A stretch of 64,000 bases of DNA from Camelus dromedarius (taxonomy: Eukaryota), in assembly GCF_036321535.1 (NCBI RefSeq), contig NC_087444.1, positions 73,780,001 through 73,844,000 of the forward strand. Reading direction: 5' to 3'. Positions 39,322 to 60,800 of the stretch are shown in pieces. The translations under genes and the position numbers were made by a program. Positions within the stretch are counted from its first letter, which is position 1. Each line of letters opens with the position of its first letter. The notes below the pieces were generated by a model that was given only the letters and a program-made list of their open reading frames with translations, had not been told where the DNA came from and did no database searches.

Positions 39322-40080
39322 CGCATAGTACCCAGCCGGTGAGTGGCGGCGTTGGAACGCCTAAGTCCCCAGGGGTTTGGGAGCTGGAGATCAGACTCTT
39401 GGTCACTAATGAGAAAGGAGCTCAAACCTTTGGGTTCCGAGATAGAAGGGCTCGGGGCCTGGACTCCTGGGTCCTACGGAGGGCCTGGGAACCTGAACGC
39501 CTGTGTTTGGAGGGGTGGGACGGGGACGGACCTCAGGGATCGGATTTAGGAAGGAGAGGGAATTAGGAGATTGGAGTCCTGAGCCGGACAGAGGAGTAGT
39601 CTGGGAGCCAGACTCTCGGGTCCCAAATGAAGGAGCAATCTAGGAATCGTAATTTTTGTGTCTCCGAGGGAGGTGGGTGATGGGGGCCTGATTTGTCAAT
39701 CCTCAGGAGGATGAGAAGCAGGGACTAAGGACTGTCCCCAAGGAAAGCAAGTAGAAGACTTGTCTTTTTGCTTCTTGGGACTAGAAGTCTGAGAGGAGAT
39801 GGGGCTGGGGGCTTTGGGGCTAAGCAAGGAGAGAAGGGGGACCCATATTCCTGGGTATTCAGAGATGAGGCAGGAAACAAAGGACCGAGATGGGAGTGGC
39901 TGGGATCAGAAAGGAATTTGGGGCAGGGACGCCCTCTCTCGTGTTGCTGTTTGTGTTACTATTTCCGTTGCTATGACTCAGAGTCATTCATCCTCAGAGT
40001 CATTCATCCTCTGATGTGATCCCCTAAATGGCTTCTAATCTTTATTCCTTTTGTTTCTCACTTTCTCCCAGCCCAGACAG

Positions 40081-42307
40081 ATGGCCCCAGGCCAAGTGCC
40101 CCATCAGTCTGCCCCCTGGAAGGATACCCACCCCTTCTTCCTCCTGTCCCCACTGATGGGCCTCCTCAGCTGGGCCTGGAGCCGCCTGAGAAGCCCAGGA
40201 CCTCCAGAGCCCTGGCTGGCGGCACCAGTAACAGGAGCAGATCAGGGAGAGGCTAAGGCTTCTCTGACCACCCACCATGCTCCCTGGAGCAGGCGCCCTC
40301 CAGAGGAGACTGGAGACAATGGAGCAGCTGAGAGCGATGGAGCAGCATCGTCGGGGGCCTGCCCTGACCTGAAAGCCAAGTGTTCTCTTCTCGAAGCCTG
40401 GAGACTTTCAGGTGATGATGATGAAGAGAATGGCAGAGAAGAAGCAACCAGAGTCCCTAGCAAGCTGGGAAGTGAATTTATAGAGGGCCAGCCTGCTCCC
40501 CTGGCCTCCAGCCTTCGGATAAGATCCCTGCAGGACCCTCCTGGGGAGGAGAAATCTGAGGAAGGAGGAGTTGCTAAAGATAAAGAGATCATGTTCCCTT
40601 TTCTCCTATCAGGCTGGGAGTACTGTCCAGGCTCGGAGTTAGAGGAGGAGGGGGTTGGAGCTGTAAATAAAGAAGCTCCGAGAACATCTACGTCCCCCTT
40701 AGCTCCAGGATCCACGCCCAGAGCTTGGGTGTGCTGCCTTCCAGTGGAGGAAGGGGATGAAGCCACAGTGGAAGAAAGAACAGAGGATAAAGCAGCCACG
40801 AAGACCTCTACTGCCCCCTCATCTGTAGGCTCCCACCCCAGGGCCTGGGAAGGTTGTTCAGGGGAGGAGCGTGAGGAGGAGGCGGACAACAAGGCTGAGA
40901 CCAGAGCAGCTGACCCAGAGCCACACTCAGTTCTAGCCCAGAGGCCCCTGCTCAGGACTTGGCAGCATCAATCCAGTGAGATCACAGAGGAGGATGAAGA
41001 GGAGGATGAGGACAGTGCTTTGTGGGCAGCTGAGGGTCTCTCTTGTGTCCCACGCACCAGTGCCTTCCTGAGGGCCTGGGTCTATCGACCAGGAGAGGAC
41101 ACGGAGGACGAGGATGACAAAGAGGACAACAAGGACAACAAGGAGGAGGACAGTGATTCAGGAGCAGCTGAAGAGGAGGGAGAAGCTGAGGGTCCTTCTT
41201 CCATCCCCCCTACCAGTACCTTCCTAAGGGCCTGGGTGTATCGACCAGGAGAGGACTCAGAGGAGGAGGAAGATGATGAGGATGAGAATGAGGATGAAGA
41301 TAATGAGTCAGAAGCAGCTGAGTCGGGAGCAAGTCCCTCCCTTCAAGCCCAGAATGCCCTCCTCAGGGGCCGGATCTATCGGCCTGGAGAGGAAACTGAG
41401 GGAGAGGAAACTGCTGAGGAGTGGAAAGAGGCTGAGTCCTGCCCCTTCCGCGTGGCCATCTATTTACCTGGAGAGAGAGCGCCACCTCCCTGGGCTCCTC
41501 CTCGGTTGCCCCTCCGACTGCAGAGGCGGCTCAAGTTTGAAGAAACCCCCGTCAGGCATCAGGACCCTGAGCCTCTCCTAAAGACCAGAAAGGTGGGTGC
41601 CGAGAGCTTAGATTCTTGAGTGTTAGGGAGGAGAGGGCTGGAAGCCGAAACTCCTGGGCTTGGGGCCAGAAGGGCTGGAGGCCCTGACTTCTGGGTCCCC
41701 TGTGTTGCAGAGGGTTGCGCTGGGAGGGCTGTGTTCACTGTAATGCAATCCTTTGCAAGAGGCTGGGCCCCTGTGGGAGGAGGAAGCAGTTGTGGCTCAG
41801 GTCAACCCCGGGGAACCACCTCCACCTTCAGGGGGCTTGGCTAATGACTAGCCAGATAACAATCATTGTTATGCAACTAATTTTTGTTTGGTTCTCTCTC
41901 TCTACCCACCTCCCATCTGTGGCTGTTTGTATCTTGTGTCTATCTCTGTGCTGGTCCATCTCCAGGTGCGCTTCTCTGAGAAGGTCTCTGTCCATCTCCT
42001 GGCTGTCTGGGCAGGACCAGCCCGGGCCGCCCGCAGAGGCCCTTGGGAGCAGTTCGCCCGGGATCGCAGTCGCTTCGCCAGACGCATTGCCAGGGCCCAA
42101 GAGGAGCTGGGCCCCTACCTCACCCCTGATGCCCGAGCCAGGGCCTGGGCACGCCTCAAGAACCTTTCCACTTCTGTGGCCACCATACCTGCCCCTACCC
42201 AGACCTTACCAATGTCCCCCATCCAGGCCACGCCCTTGAGCCATGCTACAGCCTCTCCCCTCCTTCATATGTCTCCTTGCCTGGACCTCAGTGGGAGGCG
42301 TGGCTAA
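40081..42307 (+). CDS. PPP1R15A: Protein phosphatase 1 regulatory subunit 15A (GADD34), complete, 617 aa
   Basis: Coding exons 40081-41592 and 41966-42307. N-terminus [24 protein letters not shown], acidic WVYRPGED repeats, KVRF PP1-binding motif split by the intron, [15 protein letters not shown] eIF2-alpha-binding region. Exon 2 acceptor at 40072. Confidence 0.98.
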
Positions 42308-42371: not shown

Positions 42372-43486
42372 GTCTTTTGTAGTGAGCAGTGTCTCTGTGT
42401 CTGAACTGACAGCATCCACTATTCCTGGGTCCCCAAGACAGTTGGGAAGAACAGCAAAAGGCGAGTGCCTCAATAGAGGATAAACTACATTCCCCATCAT
42501 CTCTTGGATTTGCCTTTTTTTCATTGTGAAGCTTCTATTGAACTAAGGGCTGGTGGGTTTGGCAGTTTTTCTTTTGCTTCTGCCTAAATTTTTGTTAAAC
42601 TTGGGATGGTTATCTCCCCAAGGGGGCTGGCAGCTGGACTCACTAATCCCTCAGAAAGTGTTAAGCTCCAGATTTCCGTGCCTCCTGGAATGTAAAGACA
42701 TCCTACTGGCAGGTGTGGTGAGTTCCTCAAGGCTTTCAGCTGCCCCGTTTCACATTTATAAGCCCTTTTTCCTTACCTACAGCACATGGCTAACAATCGC
42801 ACATACCTTATGAGACTGTACAGCCCAAAGGAGTTCATGTTTAAAACAATGCTTCAAATAACAAATGTTACGTAAGTGTTAGCTAGCATTGTAATTATTC
42901 TCTCACCTGCATGCATGTCCTTTAATTACTCACCCTATTTACGTCTCCAGCTTGGAACTATTCTCAGCAGTTCAAACAAGAGTGGCCCAAATGTCCTGCA
43001 CCGTCCAGCCTCATACCCTCCCCCTCTGCACTGGTTTCCCCAAGTTCCTCTACACTATCATTTCATTCCCAAACCGACCAAGCCCCCTTCCACCTTAAGA
43101 TCTTTGTAGGAGCTGTAGCTACTGCCTGATGTTCCTATCCTTGAACCTTCTGGTTCAGCTAGTTCCTTGAGATTCTTCAGATGTAGTCTGAAAATCATTT
43201 TTTTAGAGATGTTCTGACCGAGCCAGTTTGTGCCTCCATGTGCTTTCCTCCTTTATAGCAGACGAGCATTTTGATTTTTTGTTGTTTAAGACCCATCTCC
43301 CATGATCGGCCTGTGATTTCAGGAAAGCAAGTGCTGCTGAACAGCCCACTCCCTAGAGCATAGTACTAGGCACCCAGGCGGTGGCTAATAAGTATGGGTT
43401 ATTAGTAAACTGGGGCAAAAGAAGGCATGTTGGGGCCCTTTGTCCAAATGAGCAGGCACAGAAGCTGATGGGAGTATTTCATTGAA

Positions 43487-46400
43487 TTACTCACACGCCA
43501 GCTTCCCATTGAAAATGGACAAGCAGATGGCGAAGGCTTGGAGAGGGCAAAGTGGGAAGCAGAAGTCCATGGTGAACGCGTCTGGGGCTACGCGGCCGAA
43601 TTGGAGCACCACGTAGTTCGCTGAGGAGGAAGTCAGGAACTAAGCCTCGCGTATCTCATTTCCCTGCTGCGGGCCTCTGAGCCGGGAGAACTACGACTCC
43701 CGAGAGGCTGTGCGGTGCCCTTTTCTATGCCCAGAATCCCTCTGAGGGCCATGCAAACTACACTTCCCAATAGGCTTTGCAATAGCGTGGCGTCCGCCCT
43801 GCCTAGAAAAACGCTCAGGTGCTCATGGGAGAAGTAGTTCTCGTCCGCTTATGCCCCCCTTTCCCAGGTAAACCGGTTCCTAGAAGCTCACGGTCATCCG
43901 GATGCACGATCTGGAAGTTCTTGACTGAGGCCCGGGTGACGCGACCATGAAAATCGAGCACATAGGTGCCGCTGTCGTCGCTCCACGATGGGGCTTTATT
44001 TTGCAGCAGGGCCAGCCCCTGGGTGGCACCCCGTTGGAGGCGACTCAGTAGCGACTCCTGTTCCTAGAGGGTAAAGTAGGTGGCATGGTTAACCTCCCAC
44101 CAGCCAGCTTCCTACCTCCGGACGGCAGATTTTGAGTCCCTAGTCTGTCCTCACGTAAGTCTGACGAAGTCCTCCCAGCTTTACACGTGACCTTATGCAA
44201 CCTATCGGCCCTCTCCCTCGTAGGAATTATGGCCTGTCCCCCAGCCCCTCCTCTCCCATTGACCCAGAAATTCTCAGCCTTGCGGGACTCACATTTTGTG
44301 GCTGGACGCTAATTCTCTGGTTTTGGGCGTCAATTCCTGGAATGATTACAGTCATTTTCCGAGGCCCTCGGAATCCCAAGACGTTGGTCTCCTGGGGGTA
44401 GCAAGCTCCATTTGGCCTGTGTCTTTCTCCCTCCCCACCGTCCTGTTCTATTCTCTTTCGTCTCCCGGGCACTCACATAACACACAGCCCCCAGCTCCTT
44501 CCTGATCCGAGTAGTCTCTGGGAAGAAATTCTTCTTTTCAGGATTCACCCCATTGTCGAAGATGGAGAACTTCGTGCCCAAGACATTAGATCTACTCCAA
44601 GAGGGGAGTGATCAGCATAAAAATAATAATTATTACTGTTTTGCTGTTAACATTAACTGCTTTCCCATCTCATCTCATCAAATCTTCCCATCAATCCTCT
44701 ACATAAGATTCATGTTCTGTGTCCCATGTATTCAGTCCCTGCCCTCTCCCATTCTTTGGTAAGCCATGAGTTTAGCCTCCTACTTCGGCTCTAAGGAATG
44801 CTCTTCCCTCTAAAACTAAAGAACTCATATATCCCAACCCTCTTCTCCCCCAGTGCTTAGGAGTCCCAGCCCCTTGCCTCTCAAGAAGTCAAATGCCTTA
44901 AATGTCAGCCTTTGCTCCAAAGCCTTCAGTTCTTCTGTTGCCAACCACCCTGGGCTTACAACTTGAAGAACTACAAAACCCATCAGCCCTAAGAGAAAAG
45001 GTCCTAGAGCAGATGGAACTTCTACCTGATGGCCTGATGGGAAATGTAGTTCAATTGTCCCTTTCTTCCCCCAGGCCCCCTGCTACCTGTTTCTCGCACA
45101 TCAGTACTCTGCCCACCTGACTTTACCCACAAAGTTGTCTCCCTCCCGAGATAGGTCTGTGGGGTCCAGGGAGATGAGATAATTAGAGGTTTTGCTTCTT
45201 TTTCTCTTGCGCGCAGCCAAAAGGAAGTACTGTGGATGTAAGAAATAGCCTATTAGAATCGATTTTTGGTATCTGGCTAGGGCTAGGGGCCCAAAGACAA
45301 GGAAACACCCTGTCCCCAAGACAGAGGAAAGGGTAACGGAGTAATGTGTCCCAAGGCTTGCTGGGAGATGTGGTTCTCACTGAAGGAAGTCATCAGCTGG
45401 GTCCTGAATAGGGAGCTTCATTTCACATCTTAATATCTCCCCTTCATTCCTTACACCATTGGGTCCAGGGTTGGGGCTGAGCCCAGGCAGGGATGAGCCT
45501 GACTGGCAGGCAGGGCCAGGCTTTGAAGAATAGGGAAGAGCCTCTCTTGGAACTTTGCAGCAGGACTTTGGTAGGCGTTTCAACAGGGAAAAGCAGGTCT
45601 GGCACTGAGTAGGGAAAAAGCCTCTTCTGGGAGAGAGGAGTACCTTGAGGAGAGACTGCCACACCCGGGAAGGGAGTGGCCAGACTAAGAGGAGCTAAGC
45701 TTGGCTCCGGAAGGGAAATCCACGAGGGGAGAGGCTTGGTTCCTGAGAGGCAGGGTTTATCCTAGGATTGGATGGGGCCTGATTAGCACAGAAGGCTCGG
45801 TGAGGGACCAGACTTTGCCCAACAAAGATGGGGCCAATACCTCAAGAGGCCTGTAATGGGTGGGGTTTGGGACCCTGTGGCCTGGCTTTGAGAAAGACTG
45901 GCCCACCTGAAGGGTGGACAGGGCTTGATTATGGGATGGGGAGGGCCATAGGAAAGGAGAGGAGACTAGTTCTCTGAAGGTCAGGGCTTGGTATTGGAGC
46001 TGACTGGTCCTAGTTCAATGGCGACCAAGTCCGGGAATTGCGAAAGTCTTGACCTCGCTCAGAAAGGGGCTGGACTTGCCCCTGGGAATTGAGGCTTGCT
46101 CGCAAGGCTGCCAGACCGTACCTTCTGGCCGTCGGGCACCTCCAGGTAGAGATAGTAGCAAGGGAACATGCCCTTGTCTACGCCGCGCTTGTCACGTCTG
46201 ATGCAACACTGCACCGTGCAACCGCACCGCGCAGGCCTCAGCACATACGCTTCCATGTTCCTGCCCGGCCAAGGGCCTGGGGCGCGGGGAGGCCAGCGGG
46301 GCGAGCTCCCTGCATCGCTGCTGCCCGTGCTACCCGTGCCTTCCGAGGCCTCGGACACCTCCTCGCCGGCCGCCCCTGGGGAGTTCCTCACGGTAGACTC

Positions 46401-49400
46401 CGATTCCTCTTTCTGCTCTTCCAGGTCTTCGCCCTAGCCCACGTGCCAAATTCAAGTTGAGGGACAGCCGAGACCTGCCCTTCACCCAACTTGCCAACTA
46501 GTGATTGGCCATCCCAGCTCAAGAGTTACACCCTCTCTCAGACAAGTTTTCTACCTATTGGTCAAATATCTCGGCCACCTGCTGATTGGCCACTACGTTC
46601 AAGGGGCCCACCCAGCCAAGTTCTCATCATGTTTACTGGCCAGTACCTTTAGCCTCCCTCTGCAACCACACCCACTCCACCTACCTATTGGAGAATCCCG
46701 TTGAAAGTACTGCCCATTCCGCTAATGCCAGTGTTCATTGGGCTAGATAACTCATAATACCGCCCAGATCTACTCAACTGAAACTATCGCACCTTCGTCC
46801 ATACGAAGGTGAGTGCCAACTGGCCCTTTCTATCACTGTTTCACCCTCTCCAAAGCTCACTGCCTTTCAGTGGGCTGGGTTTTAATGTCTATGCTCACAT
46901 CAATTCAGATCCTCTAGATTGACTTACTAAATGGTGCATCACAGAGCCTCTGCTAGCTCAAACATAACAGGTTCCACCCACCAGTAAAAAAGGACCTTGA
47001 CTGGACTTCAGAATTTTAGCCATCCCTCACCCCGCCAGAGTCCGAGACTAGCCGTCCTCCACCTATATTCTTACTGGCTGTGCCACCTCCCACCTTGTTG
47101 GAGGCCAAGTCTCCATGGCCCCCATCACCATCCATTCCAGGGTTTGGTCTCGGACTAGGCACCTCGTATTCATCTCCAACATCCTGGGATTCACTCTCAT
47201 CCTCAGCACTGCCCCCTAAGAGGTGGAAGAAGCCCTAAGAAGACTGAGCTCAGGACACCTGGGTCCCAGGAGTTTGGGACAAGGTCACCAATACTAGTTG
47301 GAAAAGGCCAGAACTCCTGGGTTTCTGACCCTTATTTATTTCTCATCAGCCTCACTTGCCAGATGCTCCTCCCTCTCCTTGTGCTCAGGGGTCTATACAA
47401 GCTGAAAAGTCTCTGTTCTGGATCTAAGGACAAGGAGAGGTTAGAATCCTCCCTTTCCCTTGTCCTAGAGAGAGCATTGGAGAGACTGGGGAACTAAAAT
47501 GGGATGGTGAGCAGAGTTTGGGGTGATAACCCAGAGTCCTGTTATTGAAATCATTGGTCATGTCATGAGAATAAAAGGAAATGTCACTACAATGGAATAT
47601 TATTATGAAATAAAAAGGAATGAAGTACTGATAGTGCTACAACATAGATGAACCTTGAAAACATGCTAGGCAAAAGAAACCAATCACAAAAGGTCATATA
47701 CTGTATTAACCTATGCATGAAATGTCCAGAATAGGCAAATCAAAAGAGACTGAAATTAGATTACTGGTTACTTAGGTCTGGGAGAAATGGGGAGGCAGGT
47801 ACTGATAAAAGGTTCAGGGTTTTCTTTGGGGGGTGATGATAATGTTCTAAAATTCATTGTGATGGCTGCACACCTTGGTAAATACACTAAAAACCACAGA
47901 ATTGTTAACTTTAAATGAGTGCATTGTATAGTATGTGAAATATATCTCAGCAAAGCTATTACAAAAGTGAGGAGGGGAGGATTTGCCACGTGGACCAGAG
48001 GGCCAGATTTCACCCGAGGTCCCCAAAATTACCAGGTCGTTGGCGGGCTGGCCAACCCCTGCGTCGAGTCCCCGGAGGCTCTTCATAAGGAGGTGAAGAG
48101 GTGAGAACATCCTCCACAGAGACTTCCTCCAACTCCGGATTGGAACTGTCTGGTAGTCAGGATAGGGAGGGGGACTAGAGATTGGGATTTCTGAGGACTG
48201 GGGAGGGAAAAAGCTGGAGATTCAGATTCTTGGGTGTTGGAGAAGGAGAAAGTTTAGGACCTGGACTCTGTGGTGGGAGGGATAACGGGGTTCGCGGGGA
48301 TCCTTTGGAGAACAAAGATTGAGGTCCAGACTCCTGGGTACTAGTGGGAGTGGAATTCTAGGGTATAGGCTGCCCAAGGATTTGAGATTACCTGCCTCTG
48401 TCAGCGATACCAGTGGGCCACACTCGCCACTGCCATCTCCACAGCAGCTCACAGTGCCCAGGACACTGTGGATAACAGGGCGCAGATGTGCCTCTGGCAC
48501 GTTCTCCTGAAGAAAAGGGTTCCTGGGGCCTGGGAGAAGGTGCCCATTATCAGGATGTACAAATTCTGGTCCTCTGAGAAGATCCGTCTCCTCACTGGGC
48601 TCCCAGACATTGCCCCTGATTGACGACCCAAATCCCCGAGACCCACTGAGAACCCAAATTCCATCCTAAGGTTCAAACAAGCACAAGCCTACCGCTAAAC
48701 AGTCGGCGGTTCCGTGTGCAAATAGCCCCACGCCGCGCTCTCAGTCTCTCCAGTACCTCGGCTCTAAATCACCCAGGCCCAGCCCCCAGCACTTCACCAA
48801 CTTCAGCCGTCAGGGACTTCCAAACTGCATCCGGGCTTTCCCAGGCCACGCCCCCAGTCCTACCAGGCCCGCCCCAGGACTCCTTAGACCTCCCCCACCA
48901 ACCCCGCCCTCTCTGGGCGATCCCCGGCTCTCCCAGGCTCCGCCCCAGAGCTCTAACAAAGCTAATTACAGGATTCTTTCGGGCCCCACCTCTAGTTGCA
49001 CCATAACCTGCACCTGCGCTCTTCAAGGCCCTGCCCCAAAGTCTCACAGGTCCTGTCCCTGGGCCCCAACAAGCTCTGCACTCAGGCTCTCCTGAGCCCC
49101 GCCCAAGGGTTGTCAAGCCCCGCCCCCGTGCTCTACCAAGTCCCCGCCCCAGGGCTCCGCCAGGCCCCGCCCATTCAAGTCCTTTAGACCCCGCCCCCAC
49201 ACTCCCACAGACCCTGCCCCCTCCACAGGCCTATGCTCCTTCTGGACTATTCCTCACCCCTGTCTCCCGAGAGGCGTTTCTCCCGCCACCATGGTCGCCG
49301 GGGCCGCAGGAAAGCATCCAGATTGGCCCGAACCATGAGGGCCTCTTGGCGCTTCCGTCGCTGCTTCTTCTCAAACAGCCGCCGCTGTGGGAGCGGCAAA

Positions 49401-50319
49401 AGGGTGTGTGGCGGCCAGGAACCCGACAGGAAGACAGGGATGGGTGAAAGGGGGCCTGGGCCAAGGGGAGGCCTGCATCGGTGGGAGAGTTCCAAGAGTC
49501 GAGGCCTTCAATCCCTCAGCAACTCCTTCCTTAGATCCAGGAGTCCTGGCACCCTGTCCCCTCCTCCCCCAGGACCTAGGAGTCGTGCTCTCCAGAATCC
49601 TTGTTCCTTAGAAATTTTGGAGTCTCAGCACCAAGGGTTGCTTATTAAGATCCTGAATTCCTATTTTCTCATTTCCCAGTTGCAAAACGTGAGGCTCTGG
49701 AGAGCAAATGAGGGCCAGGAGTTCAGAACAAGACCTGGGGATGGGACTTTCGGGGAGGTATGGAAGATGGAAGAGGGGGTGGGGTTGGCAGGATTCCTGG
49801 GCATAGTACCTGCTGTTCCAGCTTCTGTAGCCTCATGGTGGCAAGCTCATCCCCCAGGGCCCTGAGAGAGGTGCAGGCTCATAGTGACAGCAAGCAGGTC
49901 ACCCTAGTTGCCCAAGAGCCCCTCCCTCTCCTCATTCCCTCTGCTCAACTTAGGGTTCTGAGCACTTGTGAGGTCACAGAAGGGGCAGAACTTGAGCCTG
50001 CTCCACCAGTTCTGAAGCTTTTTCTCCCAGCACTTTGTCTGTCTAGAATCCAGAAGTCAGAGATCCCAAGGCCCCTCCTGTCTCAGGACTCAAAGCCCCC
50101 AGCCTCTCCTCTTTCAGACCCAAGGGTCTCCATCTACAGCTCCTTCTCTTTAGGTAGGACCCAGAAGTCCAGGCCCCCAGCCCCTTCCTGCAAGGACCAG
50201 AGCTGAATGGGTGTGGGCATAATGAAACTTTGAGAATTCCCCCCTGCACCTGATTTCCACTCCTGCCCACCTTATTTCCCCACTCACTCTTTCTTCCATA
50301 TGTCATTCTCCTGAGACAT
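43487..50319 (-). CDS. TULP2: Tubby-like protein 2. All 12 coding exons present, but the human-equivalent exon 6 (48033-48197) has two in-frame stops; intact 510 aa if the AG at 48150-48151 is used
   Basis: Exons 50288-50319, 49810-49861, 49258-49384, 48392-48529, 48033-48197 (or 48033-48149), 47094-47215, 46122-46433, 45117-45229, 44477-44591, 44293-44391, 43892-44063, 43487-43620. Tubby domain ([42 protein letters not shown]). Gene identity is secure; functional status is not. Confidence 0.9.
47570..47965 (+). mobile_element. L1M 3' end
   Basis: ACAATGGAATATTATT...ACATAGATGAACCTTGAAAACATGCTAG...TGTGAAATATATCTC. Confidence 0.75.
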
Positions 50320-50704
50320 TCTAGAGAAGCAAAAAGAGGAGTCAAGACCCAGACCCAACATCCCAATGGACTCTGCCCTCCAACACCTGATCTTAAACTT
50401 TAAGATTTTCTCCTGGACCTATACAGCCCAAATTCCAGTACCTACACTTGTTACGGACCCAGCAGTCTGTTTCTAGCTTTTATCACTATGAGGAGTTCTC
50501 TTCTCCCCAAATACCTAACTCTCCTAAACCCAGGCATGGGAACACAGGACTTTTGACCCCAAACACCCCACCTCCAGAGACCTGAGACCCCAAGCACCCA
50601 CCTGCCTGGGATCCTGGAGACTCCCTCTCCTCCTTTGGTGCCTGGAGAGGCTTTTCACATTCACACCTCAGTGTCTTGCCTCTCTGGCCAATTTCTAAAC
50701 ATAC

Positions 50705-57800: not shown

Positions 57801-60800
57801 AGATCCCATCCTATTTCTAACATTCCTAGAGATATAGTTTGTTATAATCTGTGTCTGACCATGCTCTTTCTTTTAAATGAGTTTATTGAGATAAGATTCA
57901 TATACTAAACAATTTACCCATTTAGAGTGTACAGTTCAGTGGTTTTTTAGTATGTTCACAGGTATGTGCAACCATTATCAAAGTCAACTTTAGAGCATTT
58001 TTATCATCCCCAAAAGAATCACTGGACCCTGTAGCTTCTACCCCACTATTCCCCCAACCCCTGGGAACCTACTTTCTGTCTCTAGATTTGCCTGTTGTGG
58101 ACATTTAGTACAAATGGATTCATACGATATGTAATCTTTTGTGTCTGGCTTCTTCTAGTGTAATCCTGCAGCTTATATCACTAGTTCATTCCTTTTCAGG
58201 GCCAAGTAATATTCCCTTGTCTGGCTCTACCACCATTGGTTTGTCCATTCATCTATTGATGGACATGGGTTATTTGCACCCATTGTCTGTGACGGACCGG
58301 GCTGTTTCACTCATGGTAGCTTTGTGGGGTATTCTGGTACTGTGGGGAAAGTTTTGGCCCATCACTAAGTGTAAGAACAAGCCCACTTTCTTGAGATTTG
58401 CCTTCTGCCTCTCCCTTCATTTCCTGATACCTCGTAAGACTCATGTTACAGATGGGGACCCTGAGCAGATGGTGTTGAGGGTCAGAGAGCTGAGCTTTGT
58501 TTTCCTTCCTATCTGATGTCTTTTATCCATTGACCCAATATGACTTGAGTCCTGCTTTGTGCCAGGTGCTGAGCTGAGTGCTGGGGCTCTAAGGTGACCA
58601 GATAGGCATGGTTTCCTTCGACATAAGCATCCACGCCTTCTCTGTCCTGCTGTTTTAATTACTATAGTTTCAGATTCTGACTTGATCTCTGGTGAATTAA
58701 GTGTTCCCTTGTCACGAATGAGAAAAATCTCTCCTGTCAATTGACTGCTTATTATGTTCCATGTGCTAAGCTGCATACTTCCACTTTTGTCCCTTGGACA
58801 ACTCAGAATATCTCTAGATTCTGACCACTTCCCTCCACAGCTGTTGCTGCCACTTAGGTCCCACGTGGATCAGAGCCGTTGCCTCCTCCCTGGGCTCCCT
58901 GCCACCACCCCTGCTTTTCCCAGTGTTTTCTATTTCCCAGAGAGCAGCCAGTGTTAGCAAATCCCGTAAACACCTCGGTTGGTTTCCTGTGGCCGATAGA
59001 ACAAGTCACCAAACAGTGGCTTAAAACAACAAGCATTCATTCTCTTAACAGTTCAGAGATCAGAAATCAGCGATCAGTTTCACTGGGCAGAAATCAAGGT
59101 GTCAACTGGGCTTCGTTGATTCTGGAGGCTGGGGGGCAGGGAATCTGTGTCCTTAACTTTTCCAGCTTCGAGAGCTGCATTCCATGGCTGAGAGCCTCTT
59201 CAAAGCCAGCAGCATAGCGTTTTCCTTTGGTCATCACCTTGCCTCCTACTGGAGTCAGGTCTCCTGCTGCCTCCCTCTTAGAAGGATTACATTTAACCCC
59301 TCTCCCCCAGATAATCCAGGATCATCTCCCCATCTCAAGATCCTTCATATAATCACAGCTGCAAATTCCCTTTTGCTCCGTGAAGTCGCATATTCACAGA
59401 TTCCAGGGATCTGGATGTGGATGTCAGGGGGAGAGGGGGAGCTGCATGCAACCTATCACAGCACCCAGTTCAAGTCCTGTCCCTCTGCTCAGAATCCACT
59501 ATGAGGGGGAAGGGTATAGCTCAGTGGAAGAGTGCAGGTTTAGCATGCATGAGGTCCTGGGTTCAACCCCCAGGACCACCATTAACTAACTAAATAAATA
59601 AAACCTAGCTACCCTCCCCCCCAAAAAATTTAAAAAAAAATACCCATTATGGCTCCCCAGTGTCCTCAGGATTAAGTCCACCCTTACTGCTACACCCGTC
59701 CCAGCTCCTCCCTTCGCATGTGTGCCCTGTCGCCTGCCCCTCTGGCATTAGCATTTTTAGGGTTGTTACGGAGTACCACACACCAGGTGGCTTAAATAAC
59801 AGACGTTGGTTGGCTCCCAGCTCTGGAGGCCAGAAGTTCAAAATCAAGGTGTTGCCAGGGTTGGTTCCTTCTGAGGACTGTGAGGGAGGCTCTGTTCTGG
59901 GTCTCTGATGAGCAGATGGNNNNNNNNNNNNNNNNNNNNNNNNNNNNNNNNNNNNNNNNNNNNNNNNNNNNNNNNNNNNNNNNNNNNNNNNNNNNNNNNN
60001 NNNNNNNNNNNNNNNNNNNNNNNNNNNNNNNNNNNNNNNNNNNNNNNNNNNNNNNNNNNNNNNNNNNNNNNNNNNNNNNNNNNNNNNNNNNNNNNNNNNN
60101 NNNNNNNNNNNNNNNNNNNNNNNNNNNNNCAGGGCATGAGATTCAACCCAGAACAGAGGTTGAGGGTCACATGCTCTGGAGCCCAATGACTGTGCTAATC
60201 CTCACCCTGCCACTTCCCAGATGGTGACCTGGACACATCACTTCTCTCTGGGCCTCAGTTTTCGCTTCCATAAAATGGGATAATCACAGAACCTATGTTT
60301 AAGATTTCTGTGAAAAGTAAATGCCTTAACATGTTTAATGTGTTTAGATCAGGGCCTGGCATTTAGTAAGTGTTTGATATATGTTGGTTATTATCATGGT
60401 CATTATTATTTTAAGCATCAGACTCAGTTGTGGTATTGCCTCCTCCAAGAAGCCCTTCCTGATTGCCCCAGGCTCATTCAAGCCATTCTCTGGGCCTCCC
60501 CAGTGCCCTCTGTGACCTCCTTTAGAGCATATCCGGCCCAGGATAGGGATTTTGAAAGAAAGAATGTTGCATGAGTTCTTCATTTTTCCCCCCCATCTTC
60601 TCTCTCATCTAGATGTACAGTTGGATCACCTGAGCCTCCTGAAGCAGTTTGAACACCTGGACCCTCAGAATCAGCACACGTTCGAGGCCCGGGACCTGGA
60701 GCTGCTCATCCAGACGGTAGTGTGTCGGGGACCTAGAGGCAGAGGACTGGGGGGAGCTTTGGAGAGGGGGAGAAGAGAGCAGAGCCTGGGGCACGAGCCC

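What the first reader, a model, noticed from the sequence alone, without database searches (positions are those of the whole stretch)
48033..48197. TULP2 exon 6 carries two in-frame stop codons in an otherwise intact gene
Seen: the acceptor at 48198-48199 gives a 165-nt phase 1-1 exon reading [27 protein letters not shown], with TAG at 48175-48177 and TGA at 48157-48159. As I recall, human reads VFRNLGLQSPFLSWLPD here with the same 165-nt size, so CAG>TAG and TGG>TGA. The other 11 coding exons are open with canonical splice sites. A pyrimidine-preceded AG at 48150-48151 lies exactly 48 nt downstream, keeps phase and removes both stops (510 aa). Skipping the whole symmetric exon also keeps frame. 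Inference: two stops confined to the skippable 48 nt fit a lineage-specific acceptor shift better than pseudogenisation, but gene loss or an NMD-regulated isoform are possible.
Basis: partly seen in the sequence, partly recalled or inferred. Interest (0 to 1): 0.7.

Follow-up and report, generated by a model that had tools for sequence, protein, structure and literature searches.

The report
Camel TULP2 stops lie in intron
The two stop codons are real letters, but they sit in the last 48 bases of an intron, upstream of the splice acceptor that nearly all mammals use, so the dromedary TULP2 gene is intact and ordinary.

Summary
On the minus strand there is TAG at 48177-48175, TGA at 48159-48157, and an AG at both 48199-48198 and 48151-48150. 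The 165-nt "exon", however, is the primate exon boundary projected onto a camel.

- With the downstream acceptor (exon 48149-48033, 117 nt), the 12 coding exons give an open 510-aa protein. It has no substitution against NCBI's Camelus dromedarius TULP2 over 491 aligned residues.
- All ten NCBI camelid models (dromedary, Bactrian, wild camel, alpaca) use this acceptor.
- 88 of 129 mammalian TULP2 representatives use it too, including marsupials, xenarthrans, afrotherians, carnivores, bats and all other cetartiodactyls.
- In genomic alignments of ten mammals the downstream acceptor is invariant. The upstream AG is missing in goat, rhino, seal, squirrel and a marsupial.
- The TGA is shared by camelids, porpoise, goat and rhino, so it is tens of millions of years old. 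The TAG is shared by all three camelids examined.
- The coding sequence stays open in every species, with dN/dS about 0.3 (0.12 in the tubby domain between dromedary and alpaca).

The gene is not a pseudogene, and there was no camelid acceptor shift. The 16-residue extension is the lineage-restricted state, seen in primates, muroids and a few others. This is ordinary and already annotated.

The parts
50288..50319 (-). TULP2 coding exon 1 (ATG at 50319-50317; [11 protein letters not shown])
   Evidence: matches the N-terminus of C. bactrianus XP_045366632.1 (P0275)
49810..49861 (-). coding exon 2
   Evidence: AG/GT borders, same length in 9 mammals
49258..49384 (-). coding exon 3
48392..48529 (-). 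coding exon 4 (ends ...PLVSLTEA; donor GT 48391-48390)
48150..48197 (-). The 48 nt under question. They are the 3' end of the intron and form the pyrimidine tract of the conserved acceptor. They hold TAG 48177-48175 and TGA 48159-48157. An upstream AG at 48199-48198 precedes them, and they end in the used AG at 48151-48150.
   Evidence: excluded from all NCBI camelid models
48033..48149 (-). coding exon 5 as used (117 nt, phase 1-1; [39 protein letters not shown])
47094..47215 (-). coding exon 6
46122..46433 (-). coding exon 7 (312 nt). The acceptor is at 46435-46434, 21 nt upstream of a second AG, and the exon begins [10 protein letters not shown].
45117..45229 (-). coding exon 8 (tubby domain)
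44477..44591 (-). coding exon 9 (tubby domain)
44293..44391 (-). coding exon 10 (tubby domain)
43892..44063 (-). coding exon 11 (tubby domain)
43487..43620 (-). coding exon 12, ending ...FNGKLACE, with stop TAA at 43489-43487

Best explanation
The window carries the single, intact TULP2 orthologue of Camelus dromedarius on the minus strand, between NUCB1 and PPP1R15A. Its fifth coding exon is 117 nt (48149-48033) and is spliced at the AG at 48151-48150. This is the acceptor that nearly all mammals use, and it yields a 510-aa protein with Tub_N and Tub domains. The 48 nt upstream (48197-48150) are intron: they form the pyrimidine-rich tract in front of that acceptor. Their TAG and TGA are therefore never translated in the main mRNA. 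Reading them as exon comes from applying the primate boundary, where an upstream AG is used and adds 16 residues. Shown here: the letters, the open frame, the agreement with database models, conservation of the acceptor, the age of the stops, and purifying selection. Inferred: that the camel spliceosome mainly uses the downstream AG.
For: 1. The spliced model with acceptor 48151-48150 gives 510 aa with no stop. It has 0 substitutions against XP_064346090.1 (C. dromedarius) over 491 residues, 4 against C. bactrianus and 11 against alpaca.
2. All ten NCBI camelid TULP2 proteins read SLTEA|DSS[ND]PELEEV.
3. Of 129 mammalian TULP2 cluster representatives, 88 have no residue between the two exons and 19 have the 15-17 residue extension.
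4. In the genomic alignment of 10 mammals (A2), YAG|RCAGTTC is invariant, marsupial included. The upstream AG is present only in camelids, porpoise and sloth. It is TGG in goat and rhino and absent in seal, squirrel and Dromiciops. The segment's length varies by 4, 3 and 6 nt.
5. The TGA is shared in frame by camelids, porpoise, goat and rhino, and the TAG by dromedary, Bactrian camel and alpaca. Even so, all 12 exons stay open with AG/GT borders in 9 species.
6. dN/dS between dromedary and alpaca is 0.30 (tubby domain 0.12), like other mammal pairs at 0.26-0.39. There are 11 synonymous and 11 non-synonymous codon differences, binomial p = 0.0135 against 74% non-synonymous.
7. Tub scores E = 1e-90 and Tub_N E = 3e-48.
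8. The genome has a single TULP2 locus.
9. Tulp2 knockout male mice are infertile (PMC7982829; PMC9126596), so retention is expected.
Against: The database models are gene predictions that favour open frames, so they are not independent proof of acceptor choice. In camelids the upstream AG is intact and has a very good pyrimidine tract (TTTTTCCCTCCCCAG). By position it could compete with the downstream site. The within-camelid selection test rests on only 22 codon differences.
Confidence: 0.87

Rival explanations
1. Both acceptors are used in camelids. The upstream AG at 48199-48198 gives a transcript with premature stops that is degraded by NMD or yields a 124-residue fragment. It would be an unproductive isoform that lowers TULP2 output, alongside the productive 510-aa form.
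For: The upstream AG and its strong pyrimidine tract are intact in all three camelids and in porpoise. Primates do use the homologous site. RNA runs labelled reproductive system hold 62-74% of the words of the 7-kb gene, far more than the exons (about 22%) can account for, so unspliced or variably spliced RNA is present.
Against: No junction data. Goat, rhino, seal and squirrel have lost the upstream AG without apparent consequence, so nothing suggests the site is maintained for regulation. None of the ten camelid models includes it.
Confidence: 0.1
2. TULP2 is a unitary pseudogene, or is being lost, in camelids. The 165-nt exon is constitutive and the two stops truncate the protein before the tubby domain.
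For: Two in-frame stops if the primate boundary is applied.
Against: The stops predate the camel-alpaca split, and the TGA predates the camelid-ruminant-cetacean-rhino splits. Yet no other lesion exists in any of 9 species, and dN/dS is 0.3 overall and 0.12-0.3 in the tubby domain. The upstream acceptor does not even exist in goat or rhino, which carry the same TGA. There is no second copy that could compensate.
Confidence: 0.02
3. The stops are assembly or sequencing errors, or a private polymorphism of the sequenced animal.
For: None found.
Against: Identical TAG and TGA stand in two other camelid assemblies. Six DNA runs from two studies hold all sampled 31-letter words of the stretch.
Confidence: 0.01

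Closest known systems
NCBI RefSeq model of Camelus dromedarius TULP2 (XP_064346090.1) and the other camelid models (C. bactrianus XP_045366632.1/.2, C. ferus XP_032343283.1, Vicugna pacos XP_072822778-782, XP_031537973.1)
   Same: Same locus and same exon 5 boundary (TEA|[10 protein letters not shown]). The sequence is identical over 491 residues.
   Different: The dromedary RefSeq model starts at the Met of MRLQKLEQ and reads 29 residues of intron in front of coding exon 3. The window also holds the conventional first coding exon ([11 protein letters not shown]), as in the 510-aa C. bactrianus model.
Human and other primate TULP2 (Pan troglodytes isoform X2, P0257; Homo sapiens partial, P0281)
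   Same: Orthologous gene, same 12 coding-exon plan, same neighbours. The 48-nt segment is homologous: VFRNLGLQSPFLSWLP in primates versus VLRNPNL*SPSLS*LP in camel.
   Different: Primates splice at the upstream AG and translate the 48 nt (CAG and TGG where camel has TAG and TGA). Camel and most mammals splice 48 nt further downstream.
Tandem alternative 3' splice sites, with exonisation of an intron end
   Same: Two AGs 48 nt apart, in phase, each behind its own pyrimidine tract. Different lineages are annotated with different sites.
   Different: Use of both sites within a single species was not shown here. In camel one of the two choices is non-coding.

Membership tests
Tubby-like protein family, TULP2 orthologue | C-terminal Tub domain (PF01167) | tested here: met
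   E = 1e-90, 304 bits, profile positions 3-255 of 256, on P0226. P0226 is identical to the window's spliced translation over 491 residues.
Tubby-like protein family, TULP2 orthologue | Tubby N-terminal region (PF16322) | tested here: met
   E = 3.1e-48.
Tubby-like protein family, TULP2 orthologue | Closest relatives are proteins named TULP2, and the gene lies between NUCB1 and PPP1R15A | tested here: met
   All named hits are tubby-related protein 2. The seal locus has a PP1c_bdg-bearing neighbour downstream and the rhino locus has NUCB1 upstream. The window has a 522-aa acidic-repeat ORF at 40051-41619 on the + strand in the PPP1R15A position. There is a single locus in the genome.
Tubby-like protein family, TULP2 orthologue | Uninterrupted reading frame with canonical splice sites | tested here: met
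   510 codons and AG/GT at all borders when the acceptor at 48151-48150 is used.
Tubby-like protein family, TULP2 orthologue | Testis expression | tested here: inconclusive
   RNA-seq runs labelled reproductive system hold 47-74% of the gene's words. Tissue, species and splice form could not be read because read laying was lost.
Unitary pseudogene | Disabling lesion inside a constitutive coding exon | tested here: not met
   Both stops lie upstream of the acceptor that is invariant in 10 mammals and used in 88 of 129 orthologue representatives.
Unitary pseudogene | Relaxed constraint (dN/dS near 1) and further lesions accumulating after the first | tested here: not met
   dN/dS is 0.24-0.30 among camelids and 0.12-0.30 in the tubby domain. 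There is no other stop or frameshift in three camelids.
Alternative 3' splice site coupled to NMD | Both acceptors used in the same species, with the stop-containing form stabilised when NMD is blocked | not testable with these tools
   Needs junction reads.

The most novel reading that the evidence does not exclude
The two acceptors may be an old boreoeutherian alternative pair. On this reading a TGG>TGA change in the common ancestor of odd- and even-toed ungulates ended the coding capacity of the long form. Camelids and porpoises kept a strong upstream acceptor, so they still make a stop-containing, NMD-targeted isoform that tunes TULP2 dosage in spermatids.
Probability: 0.1. Interest if true: 0.3.

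Novelty: already known. Interest (0 to 1): 0.07.

Why it matters
It matters mainly as a correction. A fertility gene (Tulp2-null male mice are infertile) would have been flagged as damaged or oddly rescued in camels, when it is intact and already annotated that way.

The general lesson for the scan is that human exon boundaries are not safe templates. Here the human and primate boundary is the derived or minority state. The stops are intronic letters, one of them shared with goat, porpoise and rhino.

A small by-product is a clean example of a 48-nt intron end that is translated in primates and muroids but not in most other mammals.

Tried and rejected
They were only part of a local BLAST subject inside a sandbox script.
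2. Transcript-derived protein fragments. I searched for fragments from Logan RNA assemblies spanning the junction with P0226:38-215. There were only six hits, none from camel transcripts. The one Logan hit (P0283) is a carnivore-like unspliced contig, and the Logan member of the camel cluster (P0277) is an unspliced exon-7 read-through.
3. Genomic loci that could not be fetched: alpaca isoform X2 and pig isoform X2 are not on record, golden mole has no DNA, and the C. ferus look-up was not sent.
4. Literature. No paper links TULP2 and camels in a relevant way.
5. My first gene model used the AG 21 nt downstream for exon 7 and gave 502 aa. I corrected it to 510 aa after comparison with P0226.
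6. Phocoena sinus, Otolemur, Neovison and some other UniRef-only models show a long form. The porpoise genomic locus fetched here has a 52-nt segment and an in-frame TGA. Such models therefore look like projections of the human structure, and I did not count them as evidence of use.
7. I considered CTGAC, which contains the TGA, as the branch point of the downstream acceptor. I rejected it as too close: the A lies 8 nt before the exon.

Full report
**What is in the sequence.**
- After the donor at 48392 (GT 48391-48390) there is an AG at 48199-48198.
- The 165 nt from 48197 to 48033 read, in phase 1, [28 protein letters not shown]..., with TAG at 48177-48175 and TGA at 48159-48157.
- A second AG at 48151-48150 lies 48 nt downstream, in phase.
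- The segment between the two AGs is 69% pyrimidine. From its own composition 0.36 stops would be expected in 16 codons, and 0.75 from uniform composition. Two stops are unremarkable if the segment is not coding.

**The gene.** I rebuilt the gene from the sequence and corrected one acceptor after comparison with database proteins (exon 7 starts at 46433, not 46412).
- With the downstream AG for exon 5, the twelve coding exons are 50319-50288, 49861-49810, 49384-49258, 48529-48392, 48149-48033, 47215-47094, 46433-46122, 45229-45117, 44591-44477, 44391-44293, 44063-43892 and 43620-43490, followed by TAA.
- They give 510 codons with AG/GT at every border.
- The product has no substitution against NCBI's Camelus dromedarius TULP2 (XP_064346090.1, P0226) over 491 aligned residues. 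It has 4 against C. bactrianus and 11 against alpaca, so the window is dromedary.
- P0226 scores Tub at E = 1e-90 and Tub_N at E = 3e-48.
- The genome has only this one TULP2 locus.
- The neighbours fit the usual NUCB1-TULP2-PPP1R15A arrangement (and the scan's note s1-188290).

**How other annotations treat the 48 nt.**
- All ten NCBI camelid proteins join ...PLVSLTEA directly to DSS[ND]PELEEV, that is, they use the downstream AG.
- I located the end of exon 4 and the start of the short exon 5 in 129 mammalian TULP2 cluster representatives. Of these, 88 have nothing in between, 19 have a 15-17 residue insert, 12 lack one of the exons (skipped isoforms and fragments) and 10 are odd models.
- The short form covers marsupials, xenarthrans, afrotherians, carnivores, bats, perissodactyls, squirrels and other non-muroid rodents, pikas, a loris and all cetartiodactyl NCBI models.
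- The insert (VFRNLGLQSPFLSWLP in chimpanzee and in a partial human protein) is found in primates, muroid rodents, two eulipotyphlans, one otter model and several UniRef-only models that look like projections of the human structure.

**Genomic comparison.** I fetched the TULP2 loci of C. bactrianus, alpaca, a porpoise, goat, sloth, the marsupial Dromiciops, elephant seal, white rhinoceros and grey squirrel. I then aligned the region (A1, A2).
- The downstream acceptor and the first exon bases (YAG|RCAGTTC) are the same in all ten species, the marsupial included.
- The upstream AG exists only in the camelids, the porpoise and the sloth. It is TGG in goat and rhino and is absent in seal, squirrel and Dromiciops.
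- The segment differs in length by amounts that are not multiples of three (52 nt in the porpoise). It cannot be aligned at all in the marsupial.
- The TGA, in the frame of the downstream exon, is shared by camelids, porpoise, goat and rhino. Seal and sloth have TGG. The change is therefore old, most simply placed in the common ancestor of even- and odd-toed ungulates.
- The TAG is shared by dromedary, Bactrian camel and alpaca.

**Is the gene decaying?** No.
- In all nine species with alignable exons, the twelve exons (with the short exon 5) are open, of nearly identical lengths and flanked by AG/GT.
- Pairwise dN/dS (Nei-Gojobori) between dromedary and alpaca is 0.30 overall and 0.12 in the tubby domain. 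That is within the range of other mammal pairs (0.26-0.39 overall).
- Dromedary and alpaca differ at 11 synonymous and 11 non-synonymous codons, against about 74% non-synonymous expected without constraint (binomial p = 0.0135). The sample is small but points the same way.
- Mouse knockouts of Tulp2 are male-infertile (PMC7982829; PMC9126596), so retention is expected.

**Conclusion and mechanism.** The 48 nt are the end of the intron and form the pyrimidine tract in front of the conserved acceptor. The real exon is 117 nt, and the stops are not translated in the main mRNA. It is shown that this reading gives the intact, conserved, constrained gene, and that it matches all existing camelid annotations. 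It is inferred, not shown, that the camel spliceosome mainly picks the downstream AG. The upstream AG in camelids has a good tract (TTTTTCCCTCCCCAG) and might be used in some transcripts. Those transcripts would carry premature stops. This is the only open point.

**What failed.**
The cap then blocked a second try. I worked beside those places and sent none of their letters to any database search afterwards. They were only inside a local subject sequence in one sandbox script.
- No camel transcript fragments spanning the junction are in the protein collection.
- The run search does show that RNA-seq runs labelled reproductive system hold 47-74% of the words of the 7-kb gene. That is more than the exons alone (about 22%), so unspliced RNA or DNA is in those libraries. 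This is weak evidence of expression and no evidence on acceptor choice.

**Verdict.** It is wrong that this is a camelid-specific shift rescuing a damaged exon. This is an ordinary, already annotated gene and deserves a low interest score.

Noticed in passing
window 49247-49495 (-) and P0226: NCBI's dromedary model XP_064346090.1, like the C. ferus and one alpaca model, starts at the Met of MRLQKLEQ. It translates 29 residues of intron in front of coding exon 3 ([29 protein letters not shown]). The window also has the conventional first coding exon ([11 protein letters not shown], 50319-50288), as used in the 510-aa C. bactrianus model. The RefSeq 5' end for dromedary may be a minor isoform or a suboptimal model.
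   Followed up: partly
window 46412-46435 (-): Exon 7 has two in-phase AGs 21 nt apart. The upstream one adds GEDLEEQ, and the camelid and most other models use it. Alpaca isoforms X1 and X2 also differ by one residue near this exon (511 versus 510 aa), which suggests a NAGNAG-type choice.
   Followed up: partly
window 40051-41619 (+): A 522-aa open frame rich in acidic repeats ([10 protein letters not shown].. units) lies convergent with TULP2, in the position of PPP1R15A (GADD34). It has no Pfam hit at E <= 0.001. The homologous neighbour in the seal locus carries a weak PP1c_bdg hit.
   Followed up: partly
window 59920-60129: A run of 210 N (assembly gap or masked stretch).
   Followed up: no
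They lie in the intron between coding exons 5 and 6. They were not examined further and not sent to any search.
   Followed up: no
window 43400-50400: RNA-seq runs labelled 'reproductive system metagenome' hold 62-74% of the sampled words of the whole gene, introns included. Runs of a second organism label hold 47-69%, which would also fit DNA of a sister species at about 1% divergence.
   Followed up: no
P0241, and isoforms of cat, dog, meerkat, panda, narwhal and tamandua: Models that skip the whole exon 5 (TEA|GGSAEDE) exist in several species. They include an early C. ferus model (EPY89142.1), which also reads through the intron after exon 6.
   Followed up: partly
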